64,000 nucleotides of DNA, from positions 2,160,689 to 2,224,688 of the forward strand of contig CM074809.1 in NCBI GenBank assembly GCA_037447605.1, written 5' to 3'. Origin of the DNA: Zygnema circumcarinatum SAG 698-1b. Taxonomy: Eukaryota > Plantae > Zygnematophyceae. Below, one piece after another: positions 47,524 to 63,774 of this stretch. Made by a program: the position numbers and the translations under genes. Under the pieces are notes generated by a model that saw only the letters and a program-made list of their open reading frames with translations, had not been told where the DNA came from and did no database searches. Each line of letters begins with the position of its first letter. Within the stretch, counting starts at the first letter, position 1.

Positions 47524-50500
47524 TCACATTACAACACAGTTACTTCCACTTTTCCTATCCCTTTCGTCAACCCTAGCAGCGGCTGCAGCAGTTGGTGGCC
47601 AAGTGGGACCCTGCATCAAGGAAAACAAAGGAAGCCCTGGTAAGGATGGACCCATGACCCGTGATGGAGTGACCGTGCGGGAAGGTGCAGGCCGGTAATG
47701 GCCAACCTCCTTTCTAAAGCAAAAGCATGCTGGGTGACTAACCCATGCTCCTGTCCAAGGACTTGACCAACGGCTCCCCTTTCCAAAGCACATGTGGGCA
47801 TGATGCATGTTGTCGGCAATTGACTCCTCATGTCAAGCTTCTCCAACAAAGGAAAAGCGAATGCAAGAAATTACAGATCATGACTATCACAATTTCCAGC
47901 CAAAAACAAGCCTACAAACAGCAACAGCAACAGCTTACAGCCTGCTCACCATTTGACAATAACAAAAGACTCGGTCCTTTTTCCACTGGTATGAGACATC
48001 GCATGGCAGGTCAGTTGTCTCAGGCGCTACCGTTCACGAGTCCATCGACCTACCTCGATTAGACAGCTCATTGCAGGCCTGAAACAACTAAGTTACGAGC
48101 TAGACACTTATGACAACACTCAAAACAAATGATATCTGTGCATAAGAAATCACCATAGCAAACGACTTGCGTGGCCTCCAACAAAACGGAGGAACACACT
48201 TAATAGGGAAGTTGAGCATTTCCGAATGCACATGGCACAAGTGTGATCTCGAAAACTCACCACTACTAACCTTTGAGAGGATGATGGAACTCTCAAAGGT
48301 CTACCTTTAGACACCCCTGCTGACTGCTGCTGCTGCTGCTGTTGAAGCTGATGTTGATTCTGGTGCTGATGCTGATGCTGATGCTGCTGATGCTGATGCT
48401 GCTGCTGCTGACGCTGATGCCGCCGTTGCTCGTCCATCTCCTGCTGTTGCAATGCAAGTGCAAGCTGTAGATCGGAACTGCAAAATCACAAAAAGGTACA
48501 GGAATCATTACATGTGCTGCTCTAGTTCTTGCCATGAATAGACAATTAAAAATTCAAAAATGTTTTCGCAACGGCCAATAGGGTCGGAGCTTTGTCAAGA
48601 GTACGTAGACACACTTGAAACTTTAGAAGGCCATTTCGAACACAAAATTATCATTCACCATTGCCTACCTATGACCCGAACTGCGTCTTGAAGGACCTCT
48701 AAAACCAGAACCATCAAACAAAACTGGTGCACTTTTTCCAATCTCATTGCTATTCGGTTGCCTGAATACGCTATCAGCACCCACGGGTTTCGAGATTTGA
48801 GGACAGGTACCCACTTGTAATCATTCTCTTGGACGCCTGCTCCTCCGACCTGATCCTGCAGTTCACCAACAGATGAAGACGGTGAGACAAACATAAAAAA
48901 TAAAAATAAAAAAAATAAAAAAAAACCCGGGTGGACATCAGCATCAAAAGAAAAGGGAATTGTGGTGCAGTGCCCCCAAATGACTGTGTCCAATACCGTT
49001 GCTTTACTCTACATCCTGGGAGTAAAATACAGAAGCCCATTCCCCTATTACAGACGTGGTTGTGTTCAGAGGAGAGGTATAACTCTCCAATAAGCTAGAA
49101 CACATCCTTGTTTCTGGCCACCGGAATGCTGGATGAAACAGTTTCTCGAAGAATGAAGTCTATACTGGAAAGCCTAAAAATCCTAGATAGAGAATTTAAC
49201 AAAAGAGGAGAATACCCTAGTAGCGGCGGCGACAATAGCTGCTTCATCTTCCTCAGCCCAAGACCTGGGAATGCTTTCGGCATGGAAAATATGGAAGTCA
49301 CCTGTGCAGAACTGGTTGTCTCCTTCAACCTGTCAAATGCGAAATTCAAGAGCAGTAAGCCTGCAAGTTATGCAGCCAAAACAACAGCGGTTGAACAAAT
49401 TGTGAGAGACCGTAGCTCCACGCGGGGCTCTTATGCCATTGTCATAACTTGTCAGAGTAGTGATCTCCTGCTCCAACTTCATGATCCAAATTTAACCAAG
49501 GCAATATGAAAAACAACAAGGTTTTCATTACAATGACAAAAGTTTTATCTTCACATCATGGTCTCAGAAATTCGTCAGCGTCATAACAGCTGTGCATCGA
49601 TTGCCTTCTAATTAGTCCCCTATAAGCCCTCTTAAGAATCCTAAAAACATAGAGCACACTGCACATAGAGCACACTTTTCGTCTAACTAAGGTCCAAGGA
49701 AAAAGAAACAACGAGACTTTACAAAGCCAAACATTGTAAGAATTGTCAATCACCTCGCTTAGCCTCTCCCAGACAAGGTTTGACTGATTGTAATATCCTT
49801 GATCGGTGGCCAATAGGTAGAGAGATCCTTCATACTGCAGACACAATGCAAAGTAACCAAACATTGAGTCAGACCACATCCATTACCATGGCCACTTCAA
49901 AATAAATACAGCAGAAAATAAAGTTAAAAACATAACAACCGGTCAGTACTTCTCTGGGCAAAACACGTTTGCTAAAACTCTTCACTCGCAAAGCGGAAAC
50001 CATCCACATGGCAGGCATCCAGGACTGATACATCACCATTCATCGTACTCAATATATGCACGACCACATCATGTCCGTCCAATGGACGGCCTGACATTAG
50101 AGACAGACTGAAATTAGAGACAGAGAAAATAAGCCGGAACAGTATCCACTTTGCAAATGTCCTGTCATGAAGACTGGCGCCAAACACGCACGTCTCTGAA
50201 GCCACTGGAGCAAGGTCAAAGGACATCCTGAAATCCGCTGAAAAGGACCAACCTTGAACATGGTGCTAAAGTGATTATTCCTAAAGAAAACACAAAGCTC
50301 TCGTTCTTTGATCCCCTCCTGCAGACTGAACAGTCTGCACACAGAAACAAAAAAGGGAAGAAATTCATTTTAGAACTTAAAAATGAAAGAAACTTGTCTC
50401 CTTCGTTCAAAAGCAGTATGTTGGATGTGTACTCTGCAAGGCAACTTAAAGCCTTTGTTGCTGCTACAATGCGAAAGTACAAAAAAGGGAAGGGGCGAGT

Positions 50501-53458
50501 CAGAATCATGAGAGCGAATCGCATCGGAGCACATTACCCGTGATACGTTAGTTGAGACGCTGTGCTGCTCAGAAAATTGTCTGACAATATTGCTGCATTC
50601 CCACATGCAACGGTAGCAACACGTAAGGTTGCTTAACAAATGGTCCTACACATGTGGAAAGTAAAGTCGTTCTTCAAGTACGGAATTTGACATTCATATT
50701 ATCGAACAAAGTTATCTCTCCTTCCACTTCACAACCAGGGACCGAGAGGCCATTTTCGGACTTGCCCTTCGTGACATTCTGCCAAACAAGCACTGACTTT
50801 AACCAACTCTGCTCCATAATGCCGAGCGCATGCTGAGGGGTCGTCCAGCCTTCCAACAAGTGCAGCCATCCTGCTAATAACACACTTTCATCACTTTCTT
50901 ACTAACCTTCCTTTGTAGCTTCAGTTAACTCCTCATCACTGGCTTTTACTTCGTCCTCTCTTGGATTACATTCATCAATATTCTGTTGCTCCTGTGCCCT
51001 CCACTGTGGTGATCGCCCTGCCTCCGAAAGAGTGGGCATGGTACTTTCCTCTTCAACAGTGCGCATATGAGGCTCGCTCAACCTCACTCGGTCAGCCATA
51101 GTTTCTCCTTCACTCAGCCACACCCTCAGGCTCGGCTGCACATCACTCGTTTCATCTGGCTTCAAGGCAACATTGTCCTCCTCTTCGTCCAGGTCCTCAT
51201 CATCGGGCTCTTCATCCAGAAACGAGTCATTCTTAGGAGGTTTGACACCTCCTGTGGCCCGTGGCTTTCCTGGTGTTGGTCCTGTGTTCGGAATTTTCTC
51301 CCAGGGATCAATGTGAGACTCGTGCTTCTCTTTAGTATCGTCAGATGCAACGAAGATAGACTTCTCCCCGCGTGGAAAGGCTGCTTCCGAATCATTATCA
51401 TTCCCTTCATCCAGCTGCTGCGCTTTGAGCACCCTGCTCAAAGCATCAACACTGCCTTCATGAAGCATAGTCGCAGAGCTCTCAGCGCGGCCAATAGCGG
51501 CCAAGCTGGGCCTGTCCTCATCGTCGTCGTCATCATCATCCTCATCCTGAAGTAGTCCTGCAGCTTTTGCAATCCGATCCACATCATCCTCGTGTATCAA
51601 TGAATCCGCTGTTGCGTTGTCCATGTGCTCCCAGTTGACGGGATTGAATGATGTCATTCTGACAGTAGGTCCTTCCCCGTTTTTGCTGAAGTCCGAATTG
51701 ACCGCCACGCCTTCGGAGGGAACAGGCTCTGACGAGGCTTTAGCAGCTAGACTACTAGAAGGTTCTGAAAATCTCGAAGAATGCAAGTCAACCAACTTCT
51801 CCACTAATGTGTTGTACGATTGCGACCCAACTGCCTTCGTTGTCAAATCATCCTGCTCCCGAATAGCAAACGGGCGGTGAAGAAAATGAACTTTAAGCAA
51901 TTTACTATCGGCGATTCACAAATTCAGCCAGGTTCCATAGAGAAACATCGATCCTATACTAATATTCAACAATTTAAGTCAGAACAGGGCTTAACTGCAA
52001 CCTCAAAACACCTTCATACTGTACAAGCACCACTAGAGTACGAATCCCCTATCTTCGGGGGTTTTTTTTTTTTTTTTACTAGTCCAAGTTTAGACTTTTG
52101 CAGCGACAAGTCTGAGCGGGAGGAGAAAGCAAAAATAACAGCATTGCAAAAACTGCACCTGTTGGTTATCCCTAAAAAGTGGTCATGCTTCTGCTGTGAC
52201 TCACGAAAAGAGAAACTTGACGATAAAAACTGGAAGTTAATCCCCACCGCTCCTTTAAAATCGGTACTCATAAATAAATACTTGCAACTGGAGACTCTGA
52301 ACTTCGAAGAAATTGAGCTACTGACGCCCTGCCAGTCGTGCAGCAACAAATCTCGCACTGTTCATGAATACGAGGCTCTCCTGAATATACAATATCACAA
52401 ACATATGAATATGCAGTTCAATTGCTGCATACCTGTGGATCCACGAGCCAACCATGCACGAGGCTTATGTCCAGAAGGTCGAAAATGGCCGTCTCAGGAG
52501 TGAACTCGAAGTCATGAATACTGCGGTTCAACCAGACGAAATTAAGTGGGATAGCAGAGAGCAACAAGTAAACATCGATGAGGGAAAAAGGAAGGGAAAT
52601 AACCTGGGAGGAGGATAAGGAGAAAGAAAGTAGTCGGGAAACACCTTTACGGCAGAACCGCATACAAAGCTTTTACGGGCATGAGCGAGCATATCAGGCG
52701 CAAGCAACTCTACATAAAAGATAAGCTCGAAAGAGAATGTGACAGAGCATGTTTGCTCACTTTCTGAACCGGACATTCACGTCAATTCCTGTTGCCAGTC
52801 GAGGAAGCATCGCAATTACGTCAGACACGTTTTGTTGTTGGTTTTTAGCATAAGAATCATCGTTTCCCTGTAATAAATTGGGAAAAAACCTTGTAAGCAC
52901 GAAAGGTAGTTAACAAAGAAGGTGATCAGAAGCTGAAGCACTAGGTGTATTCACGAAAATAAAACCTTTTTCCAAAAAAGGGAGAGTCAGACATGACTTA
53001 CCGCGCTGCTAAGGTTGGAGTCGAGAAGCCTGTGTGCAACAAGTGAAAGAAGATCTTCCAGAGAAATTTCAGGTGCGTCAGGGTGCATGTTGATGTTATT
53101 GCGAAGGAGAAGCACGTTCGCTGCAGCCATGGCACAAATTTAAACTTGAAAAAAGTCAACGGTGAAGCTATAGGCCTCATTCAATCTTTACGCATAAAAA
53201 GTTGATCTGTTCACACTAGCTGTAAGTTAAACAATGAAAAAATCGTCTCATATTCCATCCAATGACAACACACGTATTCCTCCAATTTCACAACGTAAAT
53301 CACAGCTGTTTCACGACAGGAGAACAATGGCGCGCGCACATACATATTGCAAGCAAGGGACACGGCCCGTTCTCATTCTGAAGAACTATCGGAACATTCC
53401 TGCGACTCAGGAAGTCAATCCGCTTGATTTTGTACGCCTGCTTGCCTTCTGTCGCCAT
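47524..53458 (-). CDS. MINDY1/2: MINDY-1/2 (FAM63)-type K48 deubiquitinase, 12 exons, ~683 aa
   Basis: Exons 53458-53344, 53120-53002, 52867-52761, 52520-52433, 51852-50907, 50592-50538, 50334-50253, 49834-49754, 49329-49216, 48855-48815, 48477-48261, 47610-47524 (2052 nt). Catalytic QNENGPCPLLAI and FFRNNHFST; LATGIDVNVRF; LVHGWLVDPQ; ASQLTYHG; LYLLATDQGY; MIU-like SDLQLALALQQQE; C-terminal CaaX CVVM. Confidence 0.95.
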
Positions 53459-54716
53459 TTTCCCTGCTATCCCTCTTCTTCCAGCTTCTGCAGCAGCAGC
53501 AAGTAGAAGCAGCAGCAGCAGCAGAAACAGACAGCTCTTCCTCAGCACTGCAGGAAGATGACGCCACACTTCACGCGATCAAACCGAGGACCATCCAAAC
53601 CTGCCCAACCGTAACGGCCCGTTGGATGACCGTCGGCCGTACGGTGTACGTCACGTGCGTTGCCGTACGACTTGCCGTACGTGTGTGTACGGCGCAGTGC
53701 CAATGTGCGGACTTTTCGTCGCGAGCCGGCGGTAAATGGTACCGTACGAACCACGTCAGCGTCCAATAAGATTTTTGACGAGTCAGAGCCCCCCACGTAT
53801 GATAGAGTCGGCCACGTGTGCGTGCAACGTGTGTTCGGGCGAGCGGGGCGCGTTGTCGATACAGTACTGTAGCGCCTCGCTAGCTGTACGGTAGGCTGGA
53901 CGGCAGCGTCGCGGCTACCGGCCGCCGGCCCTGGCGACAGGCGTACGGCGGCCGGCCGTCCGTCAACCGGCTACCGGCCGGCCGGCCGACTGGATGCTGC
54001 CATGGGCGGGAGTTCCGACCGGTCAGTGCGAGAAACTGAACTGGACACTGAACTGAACTGCGCTGTTCTCTGCCTGTGCTGTCGAAACTGAACTGGAATC
54101 CACTTTTCATGGAAACGTTGGGAGCGCCTTGCCGTTGGCCCGCCGTGCACGCTTCCTAGGGACGCGCCACAACGGCAAGCGCAACATTGGGCCAGCTTTA
54201 GCATGAAGGCCATGGCGCAAGCAGGACACGGAAGACAACGTCATACATCGGAGTTTATGGCACGGCCTTTGGAAAAAAAAAGGAAAGTGTTGGTGTTTGC
54301 TGCAGTGGTTTGTTTTTTGTTTGTGAGGAAGGCGGGGAAGGCTGTGAGTGAAGGGACTCAGGAAGACTGGGGATGAGGGAATGTAGGCCTATGTTTGAGG
54401 CAAGGCTCTTCGCGTTCGCATAATATGGAGAGAAAAAGAGAGGGAGAGGATTGTGGAGGCTACAAAAGGACATGGACCATTGTGTAGTAAAGGCAAGGCA
54501 AAATGAACACGCTTTGTGAAGAATGCAGAGCTTTATTTGCAATGGAATGTCCAGGAACATTTGTTGCGCAGAAAGACAAAAACTTCAAACCATCTCATCT
54601 GATCTTCATGAAGAAGAACTATCTTCAGCACTGCAGCCCTCCCTCTCTAATCGCTCTCCCTCATCAGGTCGAATGAAGATTCCCGGCGAAGCGCGAGCCC
54701 TTGCGGGCGCGTGACG

Positions 54717-56413
54717 TCACCCTTGAGTTGCCGCGGTGATGCCCTGCACGACGAAGTAGTAGGGCTGGTTCGCGAGGGAGACCTTCCCCGCCCAGAAGGG
54801 GTCGCCGCCCCGCCAGGTCACCACGTACACGTACACGCTCTTGGTGAACCCCGTCGCGGCGTACACCTGCGCGCCGTTGATGGACCACCTGCGTGCATGC
54901 GCGCATGCCGGAAGCAAACACTGCTCAGTTGCGCTGCGCTGCACTCAAAGGTCACACCAGCATGAAGAAAAAACGCTCCAAAAACGCTTCAAATGTTGGC
55001 GTTCCGACGTTCGCTTTATGTTTTTCCAAGTTGAGGAGGAGACCAATGGAGGTGGTTGGGCCGAGAGCAAGAGACGCACTTCGACAGCCATCCGTATTCA
55101 ATGGAGTACGTTTGAAAGTTCTGAGAGCAGTCGAAGCCGAGCTGAGCAACACTTACGTGCGCGTTTGGATCGCTGCGCGGCAAGATTGGAAAAAAAAACT
55201 TGGAGAAAAAGTCTTATTTAGCCCAACGATAGAGGGTTATACTTTGAAGTGGCCACATCCTGGCTAAACCTGGTTGGAAGCTCGATAAATCACAGCAATG
55301 TAATGTGCCTGCTGCCGCTTACCTGGCCCTCCAATAATTCGTTTGTAAAGAGGTTTTTTGCGCTCCTACAAACTCAAAATCTAATTCATCGCGACCAGCT
55401 TCTCCCTCTCCGGACGAAAGATACACCGACGAGACCATGCCGCTGCAAGGCCATCATAAACAGGCAATCCTAAGATCTTCTTCCTCACGAACAAAAAATG
55501 TTAGGCATACAAGGTAACCGGAGCACTTATTCTTACATTTTAAGAATGCATATGTGACCCACTGTTTTTCTGCTTCTTTTAAATCGTTTTCCTTTAAGGC
55601 AATGAGCGCAAACGGAGGAGCTCGGTTTTCGTTCTTGGAGAATCCTGCTTAAAGCCAGGAGAAAGTCCGAGAGTACAACCTCGTATCTCCCGCTGGGCAT
55701 CTTGCCTGGAAGGTGAAGGTAGTGCCAGGGGGGTAGCTCCTTACAGAACGGGCTCTTGCCTCTGTAGAACGCAGAAAGCATGACCATGTTTAACCGAAAA
55801 AAATGGCTAAAATTGCATTCAACATTCAGCATTCAGCAACATGGCTTCGATGCCCTCAAAAGCAGCGAGACATGTCAGTGTGGACTCACTGCGGCGTATT
55901 GCCTAAACTAAGAAGCATACCTCCTGTCCCATCCATCCTTATGTTTACAAACGCGCCATGGACCTCAATGTGGTCTGCCCTCCCGCTGTTGTCGAACTGC
56001 ATCGCAACTTCTTCCACCTGCGCAAGCTGCCGCCCACGTGCCACCTTCGAGTTGAGCTCACCAAAAGCGATGTTGTCATGATCTGATAAGTTTCTTGCTC
56101 TTGCATCGTCCGCCAAATGCTGCACGTTCTGGCTTTTGCCAGAAATCCGTATTGCTCCTCCGGTGGCGGTGCACCTGTCGCTAAAGAGATCCAGCATGAG
56201 ACATTTGATACTGGCAGCATTGACAAACAGAGCAAGACCAAGAACAGGCACATCGAGAATCTTCGCAGCTGCTGGACAGAGCGACTTCCAAGATGTGGAC
56301 ATCAAATCTTTCACACGCTCATTATTTCTACAACAGAGCAGAACTATTAACGGGCTCGCTCACCATATGAATACCACAGTAGCGACTGTGAGCAGCTTGC
56401 TAGCCACTCCCAT
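54717..56413 (-). CDS. EG16: Glycoside hydrolase family 16, EG16-like endo-beta-glucanase with an N-terminal signal peptide, 6 exons, 256 aa
   Basis: Exons 56413-56364, 56174-55921, 55761-55680, 55442-55323, 55172-55080, 54888-54717 (771 nt, all GT-AG, phases close). Product MGVASKLLTVATVVFIWCTATGG...MDGTGEARARS..TFTFQARCPAGDTSGMVSSVYLSSGEG..RDELDFEFVG.QKTSLQTNYW..LGFDCSQNFQTYSIEYG..WSING..VYVVTW..WAG..PYYFVVQGITAATQG*. It is collinear with plant EG16 (GARWRS, TFxxxxxCPxGNT, DEIDFEFLG, QTNY, LGFDCS, WLIDG, PY). Confidence 0.92.
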
Positions 56414-58173
56414 GGCAAGACGGACTGTGCTGGTGCAGCAAACCCCTCCAAAGTCGCAGGCCCTCAAGCGACCTAAGGAGTGATGAGAGCTCCAGTGAAC
56501 GAGCCCCCTTCTCGGCCTTTCCCACCGCGACGAGTACTGAGGAAGGCAGGCAGCCGAGCAGCGATCGCTCCAGCTCCCGCAGCTCGCCTTTATCCTTTCC
56601 CCGCCGGCAGTCACTCGTCACCCGCCGGCGCTTGTCAAGCCCACACGTGTAATCGGCCCAGGGACTCCAAGAGCGGACTGCCACGTGTCCGCCTGCTTTG
56701 GCAGTAAGCGCACACCTTTCGGGTTCTGGGTTTCCGATTGGTGAAGGGTGTGCCATGTGGGACTGACGTGGCAGGCTGTGATTGGCTCCCTGTGCTCCGC
56801 AGTCAACGTGAATCTCGGGGGAGGAACGCGGATACCTTTGTTGGTAGTTGTGATGGCCCAAAAATTTACGGCGAACCCGCTCAAATTCATGTGCGAAGTC
56901 TTAAAGAAAACAAATTCAAATTACAAAAATGTACCACAAGAACCCCAAAAAGCTGAAATCTTTCTTTTCGCAGGGGCCCCCGGCTGGCAACTTTGGCAGG
57001 AAAATTTTCCGATTCTGTGCCGCAGTGCTTTTCTGATTTCCCCAACGCGGCCCGGCGTTGGAGGTTCCGGGCGACGCGCCCGAGCATGGGACCAGGGCTC
57101 GTGACGTGACGCGACATGACAACAAGCAACCACGAATGCGCCATTCCCATGGGATGGGGTCCATGGGACCCATGGGAGCCATTGGGCCCGTTGGGAAACG
57201 TGTAGCGTTGGGGAACACATGCCACACGGGACTCGTTGTTTCTGCGGGAATACAAGAGTGAAAATATTGGAAAACCTGCAATGTGCACTTTGCGGGGTGC
57301 TACTGTTCTGCATATGCGATGGGCGCTTTGCATGCGCAGGCACTCGTGCACCACATTCAAAATCGCTGCTGACATCTCTGAGAGTGCTGCGCCTCCCTGC
57401 CAGCCTGCAGGCAGCATGGCCAGTGCGCATGCCCTCATGCACCTCTTCAAAGTGCAATTGCACGCATATGCGCGCATCATAGAAACAGCGAAGGAGACAT
57501 TAGAGCATTCTTTCTCCGTTTCATTCTTAAAGTGCCAGTGAGCTTCAAGAGTGTTGAAAGATGACAAACAACAAAGAGTACCAGACACAACACCGAGGCT
57601 ATTGTACAACGCATAATTGCTTGGGGGACAAGCGCTGTCATCCGGAACAGAAAAAACAGAACGGAACAGAACAGGAATTTGGCTCCGACTGGAAGGAAAG
57701 CTATGCTTAAAAGCCGAAGAATTTTCCCAGCTCGACCTGAGCACGCCTCAGACGGCCGTCCACAAAGTGCCGCATAACAAAGTGTACATTGAAGCCATTT
57801 CCATTTTTTGCTGCCCGCGTGCGAGCGGGCCATGGAGCTGTCCTACTCGGTCCAGGCGAAAGCGAGAGGGTGCGCACGTACCCTCACTGGCAACGGGCAG
57901 CAACCATTGTGCTGCAATACATAGGCTGCTCTCTCCTGCGCCTGAACATCTATACACTGATCAGCTCCTAAGTTTCAAGCCTACATCTGCTCCCATCCTT
58001 CTGGATTTCAAGCATGTGCAGTTGAGCACTTATTTCAGCACCACAAATGACGGCCCAACTGAAACATCTGACAGGAGAAAGCACGGGCTCACGCAGAATT
58101 AAACTTATTTTGAGAAGTTGAGGGGTCATCGGACTCTCCGGAACCCTGCCGCCGCATACATTCTCACAGGGCT

Positions 58174-61100
58174 TCAAGTGCCGGCCTCCCTAAGGAGCCT
58201 TTTCATTGTCTCATAAGTGAGAAATGCGATGCTGACACCGGGAACCACCTTGTAATATTCTGGGATGATTCCGCGGTACAAGGCCAGCCATCCCTCTGTT
58301 CTGACAATATGCGCAAATGTTCCAGGAATGCCCTTCGAGTGCACTGCTGCCCTTTCCCCGGCTCCCTCAAGCTGCATTCTTCGTCGAACAAGGTCCAAGG
58401 GAAAAGTAGCTGCATGCCACCAAATGCGACAAGTCTCAAATGAGTCATTTATTAGGTTATCTGTCTGGAGTGCCTCCTTATTTGTAACCGTACTAGTATC
58501 GAAGGGAGAGGCTCTTTTAGGCAGATAAAGTTATTAATCCTTTGCCCCATACTGGACAATCCCAAGCAGCACATGACCCTAGCTACATAACATGTCAGGC
58601 AAGCAAAAACATATGCAACATGTAGACAAACATTCAGAAATCCTCTCGAAACAATCTCTCACGAGCATGTCCACACCCTCCAGAAAACCGAGGTACCCAC
58701 ACATAGTCATCCTCCCTTTTTCATGCACAATCTGGCAGACGACTGCTCTAGAATATAACGAACAGACAGTGTTTCACACTTCAGACAACATGACCTCACA
58801 ATGAAGAGGCCTTTCTGACAACCATTGCAAGTTGACACAGTGCAGTTGCAGTATCAGGTACAGTTAGTTTGCAAACGCCCCCTTCACTTTTCTGCCCGTC
58901 CTAAAAGAGGAGTCTAGAATGTGACACTGCAGCTCACCTGTGGAGGAGCATAGCCCTGCAAGACTCCCACATGCTAAACTGACTAGCGGTCCAGGACTAT
59001 CCGGGATGGATGCTCCCCATCGGGCTTTCAAAGTCTCATATACACAAAAATTGATAGCAATTGCGGGCCCCACACCCTGCATGAAGACCAAATAGTCAGC
59101 GTCACGCTTCCAAGCAAACCGTAAGGACTTCCAATCAGACTGAAGTTGCTATGCAACCGCAGCCTACAAGACCGTATGGCCTGGCTCAGATCCACATGTC
59201 AGCTAAAGCAAACCAAATGAGACAAGGAGATGCACTTGTAACCTCTGCCAACTTTTTGTGCGTCAGGAGTGGATGCATATATTAGTGAAAATTGCAGCTA
59301 AACGAACACCTATGGTGAGCTTAGAGAAGCTCCATCCCATAAAAACAACCAAGTTGCCGATCGGAACTTCCAGTGCTTCTGTAAACACTGGTTCTACCCA
59401 CTAAAGAGTTCGAGTTGATTAGAGCACCTAAGGGAAAGCGAGTGCCAACAGAATTCAAGTTCCAATTCAAGAAACAGCCATAAGCTGATATAAGCTGAGA
59501 ACGGACGAGGCACCGGCTCACCAGCAGCGTTGCGCCCATGCCCTTGTAGAGGCCGAGGATGCCCTCGTCCCTAGTAATGGTTGCAAGCGTGCCTGCGATC
59601 CCCTTGTAGTATCGCGAGTTTGTCTGTATGGCCCATTCCCTAACATTGAAATAAGTTCTGAGCATGAAATGGAAGTACATAGACGATAAAGTTGATCTGT
59701 TGCACAAGATATCACAACCCATACATTCAGAACGTTATTGAACCAAGTGCGCTTCACGAAGTCCTCTACGTGCCTTTACTTTAGTCCTTCAGAGTTGAAC
59801 AACGCTAAGATGACAAGACAGACAGTGGCAATAGGGACATGATTGGCCCAATTTCTCATTTATCCTCTAGTTTTAGGAGATGAACCTTTCTCAAGGTCCC
59901 AGTGTTTCATGTTCCTTTCCTTAGTTCCGTATCTTCCCAGAATGCCAAAGTTTCCATGTGGTAATTGGTGATCGCCATCTCAAGAATATATAACTTCCCC
60001 ATGGCACTTTTTTGGCCACAGTTTCAGCCAGGTACTTTTAATATATTTCGGTAAATTCGTCATAACATAAAGAGATCTTCATTGCAGACTCTAACGTGCA
60101 TTTTGCTGCATCTATATACAACTTCTTCTTGGCACTCCTTCAGGACTATGATGGTACATGCACAAAAAACCACGCTAATCAATCTGTATGCATGGAATCG
60201 ACATAGTCATGCACTTGCTGGACCTCGGTTGCCCATTTGATGCCCTGGCATGCTTCAACTGGGAAACAACGTCCAAACGATTACAATGGGAAGAATGCTG
60301 ACTTTCCAATCAGTCAACGAAATCAAATTGACAGAAACTATGTTATCTAATGGGAAGAATTCTGACTTTCCAATCAGTCAACGAAATCAAATTGACAGAA
60401 ACTATGTTATCTAATGGGAAGAATGCTGACTTTCCAATCAGTCAACGAAATCAAATTGACAGAAACTATGTTATCTAATGGGAAGAATTCTGACTTTCCA
60501 ATCAGTCAACGAAATCAAATTGACAGAAACTATGTTATCTAATGGGAAGAATGCTGACTTTCCAATCAGTCAACGAAATCAAATTGACAGAAACTATGTT
60601 ATCTACAAATCTTCTCCTTAAGCTGATTGCAATGGGGTCTGGCCATAACACTTGCCTAGCATATGCCGCTATTGACGCAACATTTGCCAATGATGCACCA
60701 AAACTTGGATCAAGAAAGTTGCCACCTAACAATTTCGACAAAGTTTCTCCCTGGTTCTTTCTGGCTGGAATATAATTCATTAAAGGAATGACCCCATACT
60801 GTCACCGCCAAGAACAACTGCCAAAGACTGGTGTCATACCCTCAAAGTGGTGACTGCCAACACATGCAAGTAATGGCTTGCCAATGGGTGGTACGGGATA
60901 GGCGGCCTAGTACGCGACCTAGACTCGAAAGTCTGAGGTCCGCTCCCATTAGACACTTAAGTTGACATCGTCTCTAGAGGGAAATTCTGATTACGAGCTA
61001 TACAATCAAGCGCGTCACCTTTCTTCTTTCTTGCAACGTATAACGGTCTAATGCAGCCTATTTTTCTCAGAAAGAAACAATTTGCATGATAGCACAAAAG

Positions 61101-63243
61101 GACTTTCATGTGAATCACTGGCAGTTATAACGGAACTCGTTTCAGGCAAAACCCAACCCATCCTGGTCAGTGACGTACCTGAGCAGCTAACCTTGTTCGA
61201 ACCAAGTCAAGTGGGTACGTCAAGGATGCTGCTGTGACTCCTGCACCTCCTCCAGCTATCAACTTGATCCCCACTCCCACAGAAAGGCTTTCCTTCTCCC
61301 TATCCACCCCTGCCATTTTAATCAAGTACTGCCCAGTCCACCACAACCAGACGAGAAAGCGTGGGCCCATGGTCAGGCTATGAAAGGCTACAAATATAAT
61401 TCCTCGTCATGTTTTGATGCTTTACGTAAATACACAGAATCTCCCTCGAAAAACATCAGCATACAATTGCGAAATATGCAACAATTTATATTAGCGGTCA
61501 GACTTCCTAGAAGTGTATTGACCAGGCACGCGACCTGGTGTCCAAAAGGAGCGCAAGAAGCTTTGAGAACGGAGAACGTAATTCACTTGAACCGGGTCAG
61601 TTTTCTTCACCAAAAGGCCTTTTATCTTCAAAACTGAGCTCGGAGTTCACTATTCTAGAGACCAGGCAACAAATATGTTCTCGTTACTTCTTGTGCCCAA
61701 CGGATGTCCATATTGGAGAAATAAGGTAGAAGGTTTGAATGAAACAAGATCGTAACAATTCCAGTGGTTCAGTGGTTCATCAGGCTGGCTGGAAGTTTTT
61801 TCAGTGGTATGAATTATCTCTCACACTTTAGACTGCTACTTACAGATTTATATTTCTCATAAGCGAAGAAATTAATGGCCGAATAGGGTAGACGATGCAC
61901 GATTGTCACAACGTTCCCTTTCCAAAAGGCTGTGAAACCTTCTTCTCGTAAAATTCTTGCAGCTTCCTTCATAATACTTGGCCTTTGCAACCGCATCCCC
62001 GGAGCTGCTCGCATGCCTTCAACCTGGAATTTGCAAACCGCTAGTGATTGCTCAATTTCTCCTAACTTTCTAAAAAGATCAAACCCCAACGAGGCGAGAA
62101 AAAAATCCAGAAATGGCTTGACATCTCTGGCAATCCTGGGATTCACCAGCACACTATAAACACACTGTTATTGTTCCCTCCCAGCTGGAAAAACTATACT
62201 GGCAGCCTGCAAACAAGCCCTCAGAATGCCTAGGGAAAAGTTGAAGAAGCCTGAATCTCTATCTCTGTTATGGCAGACAGCAGCCCAGGCACTGTCAGCT
62301 GTATGACAACACTGCTTACCTGAAAAAGTATTGTCAATCTAGAAAGAGGAGCCGTACAGGTTTTGCTGATTGCTCCTGCCACACCTCCTGCGAGAAGCTG
62401 TGCGGCTGTACTCAGCTGCACAGGCCTGACTACCGACTCTGTCGCTTCTGGGCTCAGTCTTTCTAAGTCGTCTACTCGAGGTTGCGGCGGCAATGCATGA
62501 TCGGGCCTGCAGAAATGGACAAGCAGACCCGTCTTTACAACTTTCACATTCAAAGAATTGAAAGACAGGGGAGGAAAACACGAAGTGGAGAACAGAAAGG
62601 GAAAAACCACCTAAAACTACACGCTCGTGCCTATGAGATAAGTTTCCTAAACAGGAACATCTCTATTACATCATATAAAAGTAGGACGCTTGAAGCATAA
62701 GAATGATACCTATTTATACTATTGTCTATTTATTTATTTTATTTATCTATTCAGTTTATAGATTGAGAAACAAACTAACGATAAGCATTCCTCCCGATTT
62801 TTCTCTCATTAGGAGCCATAAAAATTAGAAAGAATTGCCTTAAAATGCAAGGAAGGCATTAACGACAAAACATTCTCACGTATGTCCAAAAAAAATACCT
62901 CGAGTACAACAAGACAAAAAAAAGGGTTAAGCGTTTCAAGAGGCGTCATGAATTTATCAAAAGGAAAATGCGCTCATTTGACATTTTTCACAAAGGAGTC
63001 ACGTTCTGACTTGATTTGTCAACTCCTGTCTGTGAAGCAGAAGGTATCGCTCTTGCAGTACCTAATGGGTTCATCTTCCGCCAACACTGCAGGAGCAGCG
63101 CGACTGTTGTCGTGGATGCCTCCCACTGAGCCCACCCGAGACTTTCCCAGTTGCGGGATACTCGCTGAATTCGAAGATACGCCCCCCCCGTGACCTGGAT
63201 GCAGGCGCGACTCCGCCGCTGCGTCTACGTGCATGACGGCCAT
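58174..63243 (-). CDS. Mitochondrial substrate carrier (SLC25, adenine-nucleotide/CoA-carrier-like clade), 7 exons, ~391 aa
   Basis: Exons 63243-63062, 62506-62320, 62023-61844, 61328-61179, 59623-59522, 59076-58938, 58409-58174 (1176 nt). Three carrier repeats: APLSRLTILFQ...FWKGN, YPLDLVRTRL...LYKG, FPLDLVRRRMQ...LYRG. Confidence 0.95.
60285..60604. repeat. 64-bp tandem repeat x5 in carrier intron 4
   Basis: Units start at 60285, 60349, 60413, 60477 and 60541 and are identical except for one alternating G/T. Confidence 0.97.
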
Positions 63244-63685
63244 GCGCGAGGAACCCTAAACTTCAGCACAGAGACCTCACCTTCGCCAGCAAACTACACG
63301 CTGCGCGATGCAACTTCCACAGCTTCTACCAAATCCTTCAATTACTGAACATAAAAGTTTCCGGCCGAATTTCTCAAACGCTCCCTATAGAACTTAAAAT
63401 AACGAACCATGCAGCCGGAAGTACGAACGAAGCTCTAGCAGTCTCAACGTACGCACTAAGCAGCCGATAGCCCCTCGTCTCCTCCCTCCACCTCCCTCCA
63501 CCTCCCTCCACCTCCCTCCCTCCCGCCCGCCCGCCAGCGCCTGAGCGGGCAGGGCAGCTCAAGAGGCCTCCCGCGCCGCAAATAATGATTCTGCAGCGTT
63601 CCATGCGCGCCGCCCCGTTCTACGGGACGGGCGGCCGTTCCAGCTTCGTCCTCCGCCCGCTGGCGCCTCCCCTTCACCTCGCACT

Positions 63686-63774
63686 CGTCCGTCCGTCCGT
63701 CCGTCCATCCATCCGTCCGTCCGTCCGTCCATCCGTCCGTCCGTCCGTCCGTCCATCCGTCCGTCCGTCCGTCC
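63686..63774. repeat. (CGTC)n microsatellite upstream of the carrier gene
   Basis: Direct reading, with occasional CATC variants. Confidence 0.92.

What the first reader, a model, noticed from the sequence alone, without database searches (positions are those of the whole stretch)
54717..56413. Hidden secreted EG16-like GH16: a candidate intermediate between licheninases/EG16 and XTH wall enzymes
Seen: six small exons give a 256-aa protein with an intact DELDFEF catalytic motif, EG16 signatures (ARxRS, TFxxxxxCPxGDT, QTNY, LGFDCS), a clear signal peptide (MGVASKLLTVATVVFIWCTATGG), a ~45-aa linker with an NLS sequon, and a stop right after the jelly-roll, with no XTH C-terminal extension. Established: land-plant EG16s (e.g. 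poplar, grape) lack both a signal peptide and the XET_C extension and are viewed as the link between bacterial licheninases and XTHs; a charophyte EG16-like sister clade has been reported (from memory). Inference: an apoplastic EG16-type enzyme acting on mixed-linkage glucan, xyloglucan or cellulose, informative for the origin of cell-wall remodelling and easily missed by annotation.
Basis: partly seen in the sequence, partly recalled or inferred. Interest (0 to 1): 0.8.

Follow-up and report, generated by a model that had tools for sequence, protein, structure and literature searches.

The report
Divergent secreted EG16-2-like algal glucanase gene
The six-exon gene is real, expressed and encodes a probably secreted cell-wall-type GH16 enzyme, but it belongs to an already described algal group (EG16-2-like) and is an unusually fast-evolving copy, so it is a modest addition, not a new evolutionary link.

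Summary
The six minus-strand exons (56413-54717) join into a 771-nt, 256-aa reading frame with GT-AG introns. All five junctions occur exactly in spliced contigs of public runs, and the 44-nt GT-AG segment is retained. Exon 4 matches Pfam GH16 and, among solved structures, grape EG16 best (33 bits; licheninase 19; XTH 14). The DELDFEF catalytic motif is intact. The N-terminus looks like a signal peptide. No XET_C exon follows.

In a tree the protein falls inside the streptophyte EG16/EG16-2 clade (100/100 against bacterial ExoK-like enzymes). It shares that clade's markers: the R of ARxRS, the CPxGDTSG insertion, QTN and a Cys pair. Its C-terminal motif resembles Klebsormidium EG16-2.

Secreted, extension-less charophyte GH16s are already published as "EG16-2", proposed ExoK-to-XTH intermediates. 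This copy is strongly derived: its end branch is 2.1 against a median of 0.41. It keeps 30 of 48 near-invariant positions, as few as catalytically dead domains. Its exact placement is unresolved, and XTHs could not be sampled.

The scan had already noted multi-domain EG16-like genes elsewhere in this genome.

Verdict: a confirmed gene and a new, divergent member of a known kind. Interest is modest.

The parts
56364..56413 (-). Exon 1: start codon ATG at 56413-56411 and most of the signal-peptide-like segment (MGVASKLLTVATVVFIW)
   Evidence: The E1/E2 joint 56364|56174 is seen in runs X1, X2, X3 and X5.
55921..56174 (-). Exon 2: end of the signal peptide (CTATGG), a linker of about 45 aa with N45-L-S (56092-56084), and the first beta-strands of the GH16 domain. 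The internal 44-nt GT-AG segment 56061-56018 is retained.
   Evidence: Contigs are contiguous across 55921-56171 in X2, X3 and X5. No PDB or Pfam match for this exon on its own.
55680..55761 (-). Exon 3: ARARS and TFTFQARCPAGDT, carrying the streptophyte-type R104, C123 and the two-residue DT insertion
   Evidence: Joints 55761|55921 and 55442|55680 are.
55323..55442 (-). Exon 4: catalytic strand YLSSGEG...DELDFEF (55390-55370; E148, D150, E152) and QTNYW
   Evidence: Pfam PF00722 at E=5.7e-9. Best PDB matches are VvEG16 entries 5sv8 and 5dze at 33 and 30 bits.
55080..55172 (-). Exon 5: LGFDCS (C184) and FQTYSIEY. The conserved GxGxxE loop and the His of FHxY are replaced.
   Evidence: Joints 55172|55323 and 54888|55080 are.
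54717..54888 (-). Exon 6: last beta-strands (WSING...VTWRGGDPFWAG...ANQPYYFVVQGITA) and the stop codon TGA at 54719-54717. There is no C-terminal extension.
   Evidence: Contigs run unbroken from 54456 or 54590 to 54888, through the stop. The C-terminal motif resembles Klebsormidium P0154.
56414..56649 (-). 5' untranslated region, at least this long, with no upstream ATG
   Evidence: Contig X2 record 7 is continuous over 56361-56649. The uATG scan is and the in-frame stop.
54456..54716 (-). 3' untranslated region
   Evidence: Contigs X3 record 9 (54456-54888) and X2 record 4 (54554-55763).

Best explanation
This is an expressed six-exon nuclear gene of a streptophyte alga, apparently a zygnematophyte. 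It encodes a small single-domain GH16 protein of the streptophyte EG16/EG16-2 lineage. The best description is a derived EG16-2-like protein: an N-terminal signal peptide, a linker of about 45 residues with one N-glycosylation sequon, and a compact beta-jelly-roll with no XTH-type C-terminal extension. Inferred mechanism: it is co-translationally secreted to the wall or apoplast. There the retained E148 (nucleophile), D150 and E152 (acid/base) would perform retaining endo-cleavage of a beta-1,4-linked glucan backbone such as mixed-linkage glucan, xyloglucan or cello-oligomers. Its loop regions are heavily remodelled, so its specificity, or even its activity, may differ from characterised EG16s. 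What is shown: the gene model, transcription, splicing, GH16 identity, clade membership and absence of XET_C. What is inferred: secretion, activity and substrate.
For: The gene model and all five splice junctions are seen in RNA contigs from two studies. The ATG at 56413 is the first in-frame start. Pfam GH16 matches exon 4. Among PDB chains, EG16 outscores licheninase, which outscores XTH, on the catalytic exon. The full domain (residues about 83-254) aligns at 33-45% identity to Spirogloea, Mesotaenium, Netrium, Closterium and Klebsormidium proteins and to land-plant EG16s. It scores 119 bits against an EG16/EG16-2 HMM. The ML tree separates bacterial ExoK-like enzymes from the streptophyte clade that holds the window protein at 100/100; the window protein groups weakly (58/75) with Klebsormidium EG16-2. 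It shares streptophyte-only characters: R104, the DT insertion in CPAGDTSG, T163, and C123 plus C184. Its C-terminal AN.PY.F..QGI(S/T)A motif is like K. nitens P0154. The N-terminus has the layout of a signal peptide: n-region MGVASK, an 11-residue h-region (mean Kyte-Doolittle hydropathy 2.7) and a small-residue c-region. It is the only hydrophobic segment in the protein. K. nitens EG16-2 P0154 also starts with a classical signal peptide. The literature reports signal peptides in 5 of 6 K. nitens EG16-2s (PMC8711696). Intron positions are shared with the closest relatives, genomic contigs L008 and L009.
Against: No SignalP-type predictor was available, so secretion rests on heuristics. The protein has the second-longest end branch in the tree (2.1 changes per column; median 0.41). 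It keeps only 30 of 48 near-invariant columns. Lost residues include some conserved from bacteria to plants: the GxGxxE loop, the His of FHxY, the D of W.ID and a PxP loop. Activity is therefore uncertain. Its placement inside the clade is unresolved: AU tests reject neither a sister position to land-plant EG16 (p=0.27) nor a grouping with L009m and P0155. No XTH sequence could be put in the tree. If the transcript starts upstream of 56755, two upstream ATGs would precede the main ORF.
Confidence: 0.68

Rival explanations
1. It is a rapidly evolving paralogue under relaxed or redirected selection. It is transcribed and spliced, but it is either enzymatically crippled (a glycan-binding or decoy protein, or a gene on its way to decay) or has a specificity unlike any known EG16 or EG16-2.
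For: The end branch is 2.1 against a median of 0.41. It keeps 30 of 48 near-invariant columns, the same range as catalytically dead D1 domains (21-31, one 39) and bacterial enzymes (23-30); every other active-type domain keeps 39-48. The losses include G102E, Q146R, G169S, G171P, E175V, H189Q, D204N and R209Y, plus two deletions. Partial intron retention and one frameshifting exon-2-to-exon-6 joint are seen in the contigs.
Against: The open reading frame is intact across six exons, with all splice sites canonical and used. The catalytic E-D-E and the core around it are retained (YLSSxEG, QTNY, LGFDCS, both Trp of W...WxG, the Cys pair). Dead domains in this family lose exactly those catalytic residues.
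Confidence: 0.22
2. It is an orthologue of canonical land-plant-type EG16, which has no signal peptide and reaches the wall unconventionally. The N-terminal exon would then be a misread.
For: The catalytic exon matches VvEG16 best in the PDB. The AU test does not reject a clade of the window protein plus land-plant EG16 (p=0.27).
Against: Exon 1 is spliced to exon 2 in four runs from two studies, and intron 1 has no coverage, so no alternative start lies inside it. The N-terminus is hydrophobic and signal-peptide-like, whereas EG16s start with a short polar MADP... stretch. The window protein lies outside the starred (100/99) EG16 clade. Its C-terminal motif is of Klebsormidium EG16-2 type.
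Confidence: 0.05
3. The hydrophobic N-terminus is an uncleaved signal anchor, which would make this a type II membrane-tethered GH16 with a short stalk and not a soluble apoplastic enzyme.
For: The hydrophobic stretch can be read as 17-19 residues (LLTVATVVFIWCTATGGAI, mean Kyte-Doolittle hydropathy 1.86). It is followed by a linker of about 45 residues that could act as a stalk.
Against: The strongly hydrophobic core is only about 11 residues. It is followed by a small-residue c-region with several sites that fit the -3/-1 rule. Relatives carry classical cleavable signal peptides (PMC8711696).
Confidence: 0.08
4. It is a canonical XTH, or a recent bacterial transfer of a licheninase or ExoK gene.
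For: It shares the GH16 fold and the DE(I/L)DFEF motif with both groups.
Against: There is no XET_C exon or domain. XTH chains score only 14 bits on exon 4 and do not match exon 5 at all. A 100/100 branch separates the protein from bacterial ExoK-like sequences, and it carries streptophyte-only characters. It has five spliceosomal introns, three at positions shared with eukaryotic relatives.
Confidence: 0.02

Closest known systems
Charophyte EG16-2 group (Behar et al. 2018, as cited in PMC8711696; Klebsormidium nitens has 6 genes and Penium margaritaceum 12, per bioRxiv 10.1101/835561)
   Same: Both are single GH16 jelly-rolls with EXDXE, an N-terminal signal peptide and no XTH C-terminal extension, from an algal streptophyte. 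The window protein groups, weakly, with K. nitens P0154 and P0019 in the tree and shares the C-terminal AN.PY.F..QGI(S/T)A motif.
   Different: There is a linker of about 45 residues between the signal peptide and the domain; in K. nitens P0154 the domain follows the signal peptide directly. It has lost the DY N-terminal motif, the GxGxxE loop, the His of FHxY, D204 and R209, and has two loop deletions. Its branch is much longer. EG16-2 itself is biochemically uncharacterised (PMC8711696).
Land-plant EG16 endo-glucanases (VvEG16, PDB 5DZE/5DZF/5DZG/5SV8; PtEG16)
   Same: These are the best solved-structure match for the catalytic exon (33 bits). Shared motifs are ARxRS, CPxGxTSG, YLSSxEG, DE(I/L)DFEF, QTNY and LGFDCS. 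Neither has XET_C.
   Different: EG16s lack a signal peptide (PMC8711696, PMC9887094), and the window protein has one by heuristics. Identity is only about 35-45%. The window protein lies outside the starred EG16 clade.
Tandem 'dead + active' GH16 proteins of zygnematophytes, Sphagnum, lycophytes and ferns (e.g. Spirogloea SM000073S21496, Mesotaenium ME000043S07435, Sphagnum KAH9556967)
   Same: The highest-scoring full-length-domain BLAST hit is the C-terminal active domain of Spirogloea P0003, at 42% identity over 158 aa. These proteins belong to the same streptophyte clade.
   Different: The window gene encodes a single domain. No second GH16 copy or fragment is present anywhere in the 64-kb window.
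Alphaproteobacterial ExoK / GH16_21 licheninases
   Same: Same fold and catalytic motif. Exon 5 scores licheninases about as well as EG16.
   Different: They are separated by a 100/100 branch. Bacteria lack the DT insertion and the Cys pair, and have E instead of R104 and L instead of T163.
XTH (GH16_20)
   Same: GH16 fold and DE(I/L)DFEF motif, and a role in the secreted wall.
   Different: There is no XET_C extension and only weak sequence scores. XTHs were not sampled in the tree.

Membership tests
GH16 (Pfam PF00722) | Significant match to the family model and an E-x-D-x(-x)-E catalytic motif | tested here: met
   Exon 4 matches at E=5.7e-9, 36 bits, against a cutoff of 22. DELDFEF is present at 55390-55370.
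Streptophyte EG16/EG16-2 composite clade | Phylogenetic position on the plant side of the split from bacterial GH16_21/ExoK | tested here: met
   100/100 branch in the ML tree (LG+C20, 55 domains). Streptophyte-only characters R104, DT insertion, T163, C123 and C184 are present. XTHs were not in the tree.
EG16-2 | N-terminal signal peptide for secretion | tested here: inconclusive
   The n/h/c layout, the sole hydrophobic segment and several -3/-1 sites fit a signal peptide. No dedicated predictor could be run, because the joined protein has no reference.
EG16-2 | No acceptor-side C-terminal extension (XET_C) | tested here: met
   The stop at 54719-54717 lies inside contiguous RNA contigs. Downstream ORFs show no XET_C.
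EG16-2 | Clusters with reference EG16-2 sequences (K. nitens) and not with EG16 or XTH | tested here: inconclusive
   The window protein is sister to K. nitens P0019 and P0154 in the best tree, but at only 58/75 support. Alternative placements are not rejected.
EG16-2 | Signature residues common to EG16-2s (Behar 2018; Dataset S1 of PMC8711696) | not testable with these tools
   The text does not list them and no supplement is held.
EG16 sensu stricto | Absence of a signal peptide | tested here: not met
   A hydrophobic, signal-peptide-like N-terminus is encoded by exon 1, and its splicing is confirmed.
EG16 sensu stricto | Membership of the land-plant/Coleochaetales EG16 clade | tested here: inconclusive
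   The window protein lies outside the starred 100/99 clade, but the AU test does not reject a sister position (p=0.27).
XTH (GH16_20) | C-terminal XET_C extension (PF06955) | tested here: not met
   None of the relatives recovered carries it either.
Active retaining endo-beta-glucanase | Measured hydrolysis or transglycosylation of beta-glucans | not testable with these tools
   Only the catalytic triad and part of the cleft can be read from sequence, and 18 of 48 conserved positions have changed.

The most novel reading that the evidence does not exclude
The gene encodes a neofunctionalised secreted EG16-2 derivative. Its remodelled loops (loss of the universally conserved GxGxxE loop, the FHxY His, the W.ID Asp and the PxP loop) would give it a substrate range or transglycosylation behaviour not seen in EG16, EG16-2 or XTH. 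Alternatively they could turn it into a wall-glycan-binding protein that keeps a catalytic triad. Together with its 50%-identical, stalk-bearing relatives (L008, L009), which share the QTNYW and ..YYG features, it might define an undescribed algal subgroup.
Probability: 0.18. Interest if true: 0.55.

Novelty: new member of a known kind. Interest (0 to 1): 0.3.

Why it matters
EG16-2 enzymes are the proposed bridge between bacterial ExoK-type glucanases and the XTH wall-remodelling enzymes of land plants, and none has been characterised biochemically (PMC8711696). This report adds a validated gene model from an alga close to land plants, with all junctions confirmed. That model appears to be missing from public protein sets. 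It also shows that the family includes fast-evolving single-domain copies alongside the multi-domain forms noted elsewhere in the same genome. Because this copy is so derived, it is more useful for asking how GH16 specificity drifts than for reconstructing the ancestral intermediate.

Tried and rejected
- **PDB and Pfam on the other exons.** PDB searches with exons 2, 3 and 6 gave no GH16 hit. Pfam on exons 2, 3, 5 and 6 gave none. These pieces are too short or too divergent, so this says nothing against the model.
- **Word search for the window's own protein.** I queried the stop-free ORF around exon 2, region 63-146, which admits candidates of 86-274 aa. It found nothing.
- **phmmer with exon 4.** A search of 1.84 billion representatives gave 25 hits, none above 57% identity. 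The window's own protein or a close orthologue is therefore not in that collection.
- **Loose end in X3.** The 30-nt loose end of an X3 contig at 56785, a possible upstream exon, has no match in the window. I treat it as chimeric or unresolved.
- **First bacterial scan.** The scan with alignment A1 failed because no stretch was conserved enough. I repeated it with A2.
- **Exon rows as a profile.** Alignment A3, with exon rows on homologue scaffolds, mis-placed exon 2 and the start of exon 6. I did not use it as a search profile.
- **Supplement of PMC8711696.** The file with clade assignments and signature residues is not held.
- **Second GH16 copy in the window.** None found.
- **XTH reference sequences.** None could be obtained by reference, so XTHs are absent from the tree.
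- **Rejected readings.** XTH is rejected because there is no XET_C. Recent bacterial transfer is rejected because of the introns, the 100/100 split and the streptophyte characters. A start inside intron 1 is rejected because coverage there is zero.

Full report
**1. The observation**

The minus strand of 54717-56413 carries six exons: 56413-56364, 56174-55921, 55761-55680, 55442-55323, 55172-55080 and 54888-54717. They join into a 771-nt frame of 256 codons plus a stop. All introns are GT-AG; intron 3 has a weak GTTGTA donor.

I laid the contigs of four public runs of the same organism on 54300-56900. The runs are coded X1, X2, X3 and X5 and come from two studies.
- All five predicted joints appear at exactly the predicted borders. 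The E1/E2 joint is in all four runs, E2/E3 in three, and the other three in X3 and X5.
- Intron 1 has zero depth. The spliced contigs show that these unlabelled runs are RNA.
- Contigs also run unbroken from 54456 through the stop codon.
- Some contigs retain introns 3-5.
- One X5 contig joins exon 2 directly to exon 6, which would shift the frame.

The ATG at 56413 is preceded by an in-frame stop with no intervening ATG. No ATG in any frame lies between 56414 and 56755, and the 5' UTR is continuous to at least 56649.

**2. What it is**

The joined protein was built only inside local scripts, for alignment, HMM scoring and trees against sequences already fetched.

Exon-level results:
- Exon 4 alone matches Pfam GH16 (E=5.7e-9).
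- Among solved structures, exon 4 matches grape EG16 best (5sv8 33 bits, 5dze/f/g 30 bits). Licheninase scores at most 19 bits and XTH about 14.
- Exon 5 scores licheninases (17 bits) and EG16 (15.5 bits) about equally, with no XTH match.
- Exons 2, 3 and 6 are too divergent or short to hit anything.

A phmmer search of 1.84 billion representatives with exon 4 returned 25 proteins, none above 57% identity. Named members of their clusters are:
- Spirogloea, Mesotaenium, Netrium and Closterium;
- sequences labelled Leptophrys, possibly from its algal prey (my inference from knowledge, not tested);
- Klebsormidium;
- Sphagnum, Adiantum and Diphasiastrum;
- Paspalum and Nyssa EG16-type proteins.

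None carries XET_C.

The joined model aligns over residues about 83-254 at 33-45% identity to these proteins. It scores 119 bits against an EG16/EG16-2 HMM. Typical active domains score 250-340 bits, and bacterial ExoK-like enzymes about 70-115.

The closest relatives are two genomic contigs from one public run, L008 and L009. They are about 50% identical over exons 3-5 (41% over 168 tree columns). They share the intron positions at E2/E3 and E5/E6, and L008 also shares the one at E3/E4. A proline-rich stalk precedes their domain.

**3. Phylogeny and characters**

I built an ML tree of 55 GH16 domains (LG+C20+F+G4, ultrafast bootstrap / SH-aLRT).
- A 100/100 branch separates the bacterial ExoK-like sequences and one metagenomic three-domain protein (P0013) from a streptophyte clade that contains the window protein. 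The bacterial sequences came from Jannaschia, Roseovarius and metagenomic hits.
- Inside the streptophyte clade, land-plant EG16s form a starred clade (100/99) that excludes the window protein.
- The window protein sits on an end branch of 2.1 changes per column (median 0.41). It groups with the two Klebsormidium proteins at only 58/75.

K. nitens has only EG16-2s, with no EG16 or XTH, according to PMC8711696.

AU tests reject neither a sister position to EG16 (p=0.27) nor a grouping with L009m and P0155. The exact placement is therefore unresolved.

Characters support membership of the streptophyte clade:
- R104, where bacteria have E;
- the two-residue DT insertion in CPAGDTSG, which bacteria lack;
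- T163 in QTN, where bacteria have L;
- the Cys pair C123/C184, where bacteria have A.

The C-terminal ...ANQPYYFVVQGITA resembles K. nitens P0154 (...ANAPYSFQLQGISA) more than it resembles EG16 or zygnematophyte tandem domains.

**4. How derived it is**

Of 48 columns that are at least 90% conserved across 34 active-type streptophyte domains, the window protein keeps 30.
- Every other active-type domain keeps 39-48, most of them 45-48.
- Catalytically dead N-terminal domains of the tandem proteins keep 21-31 (one keeps 39).
- Bacterial enzymes keep 23-30.

Changed positions include several that are conserved from bacteria to plants:
- G102E;
- the GxGxxE loop (G169S, G171P, E175V);
- H189Q in FHxY;
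- D204N in W.ID;
- a deleted PxP loop.

Also changed are Q146R and R209Y (bacteria have His at both positions).

What it keeps is the catalytic E148-D150-E152, YLSSxEG, QTNY, LGFDCS and both Trp of W...WxG.

The gene is therefore intact and expressed but is evolving quickly. Its activity is plausible but not assured.

**5. Secretion and architecture**

The N-terminus has the layout of a signal peptide:
- a charged n-region, MGVASK;
- an 11-residue hydrophobic core, LLTVATVVFIW (mean Kyte-Doolittle hydropathy 2.7 over its best 9 residues);
- a small-residue c-region, CTATGG, with several sites that fit the -3/-1 rule.

It is the only hydrophobic segment in the protein. This fits a cleavable signal peptide, but I could run no predictor.

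A linker of about 45 residues with one N-L-S sequon precedes the domain. In K. nitens P0154 the domain follows the signal peptide directly.

There is no downstream XET_C. The next gene downstream is a MINDY deubiquitinase. The next gene upstream is a mitochondrial carrier. No other GH16 copy lies in the window.

**6. Comparison with what is known**

- Land-plant EG16s lack both a signal peptide and the XTH extension, yet are found in walls (PMC8711696, PMC9887094).
- A second group, EG16-2, is charophyte-specific and mostly carries signal peptides. It lacks the extension and has been proposed as the intermediate between alphaproteobacterial ExoKs and XTHs (PMC8711696).
- Penium has 12 EG16-2 genes and Klebsormidium 6. 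The expansion of EG16 homologues in charophytes has been noted before (bioRxiv 10.1101/835561).

This gene is a new and unusually divergent member of it.

Earlier notes of this scan (unverified by me for this genome) report multi-domain EG16-like genes elsewhere in the same genome and call the organism a zygnematophyte. My own hits confirm that such tandem dead-plus-active proteins exist in zygnematophytes, Sphagnum, ferns and lycophytes.

**7. 'Hidden'**

No protein of 86-274 aa shares exon 2 words, and no near-identical exon 4 exists in the representative library. The protein is thus absent from those collections. Whether the genome's own annotation contains it could not be checked.

**8. 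Verdict**

The gene is confirmed. The gene is a new member of a known kind. Interest is about 0.3, because the category is published and this copy is too derived to serve as an ancestral intermediate. Its divergence gives it a modest chance of being functionally new.

The joined protein was not sent to any database, fold or signal-peptide tool. XTHs are not in the tree. No structure model was made.

Noticed in passing
window 54888/55921 (minus strand, exon 2 joined directly to exon 6): One contig of run X5 (depth about 10, 26 nt on the shorter side) skips exons 3-5. This joint shifts the frame and would stop about 22 codons into exon 6. It is either an unproductive isoform or an assembly artefact.
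   Followed up: partly
window 56640-56889: The region upstream of the GH16 5' UTR is transcribed at higher contig depth (about 19-22 in X2) than the gene itself (about 13). It could be a longer 5' UTR, which would contain upstream ATGs at 56756 and 56890, or a separate or overlapping transcript. An X3 contig has a 135-nt loose end at 56785 that matches nothing in the window.
   Followed up: partly
window 54554-55763: One X2 contig runs unspliced through introns 3, 4 and 5, while intron 1 has no coverage in any run. This suggests partial intron retention and not DNA contamination.
   Followed up: no
window 49972-53569 (minus strand): The downstream neighbour is a multi-exon MINDY-type deubiquitinase gene (Pfam PF04424 on ORFs at 53303-53569 and 50100-50342). 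It includes a long acidic, low-complexity exon at 50905-51900 with no Pfam match.
   Followed up: partly
window 58174-62610 (minus strand): The upstream neighbour is a multi-exon mitochondrial carrier family gene (Pfam PF00153 on three exon ORFs).
   Followed up: partly
window 63481-63519 and 63686-63774: Two simple tandem arrays: a CCTCCCTCCA unit (3.9 copies) and a CGTC / 24-nt unit (22 and 3.7 copies). They create spurious repetitive ORFs (GRTDGWTD...) on both strands.
   Followed up: partly
L008 and L009 (Logan contigs of SRR30199805): Two paralogous or allelic genomic contigs from an unidentified eukaryote encode the window protein's closest relatives. Identity is about 50% over exons 3-5, and they share the QTNYW and ..YYG features and intron positions. 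A proline-rich, extensin-like stalk lies directly upstream of the GH16 domain.
   Followed up: partly
P0013 (ENA metagenome protein, 806 aa): A protein with three tandem GH16 domains. In the tree it groups with the bacterial ExoK-like sequences, not with the streptophyte clade.
   Followed up: no
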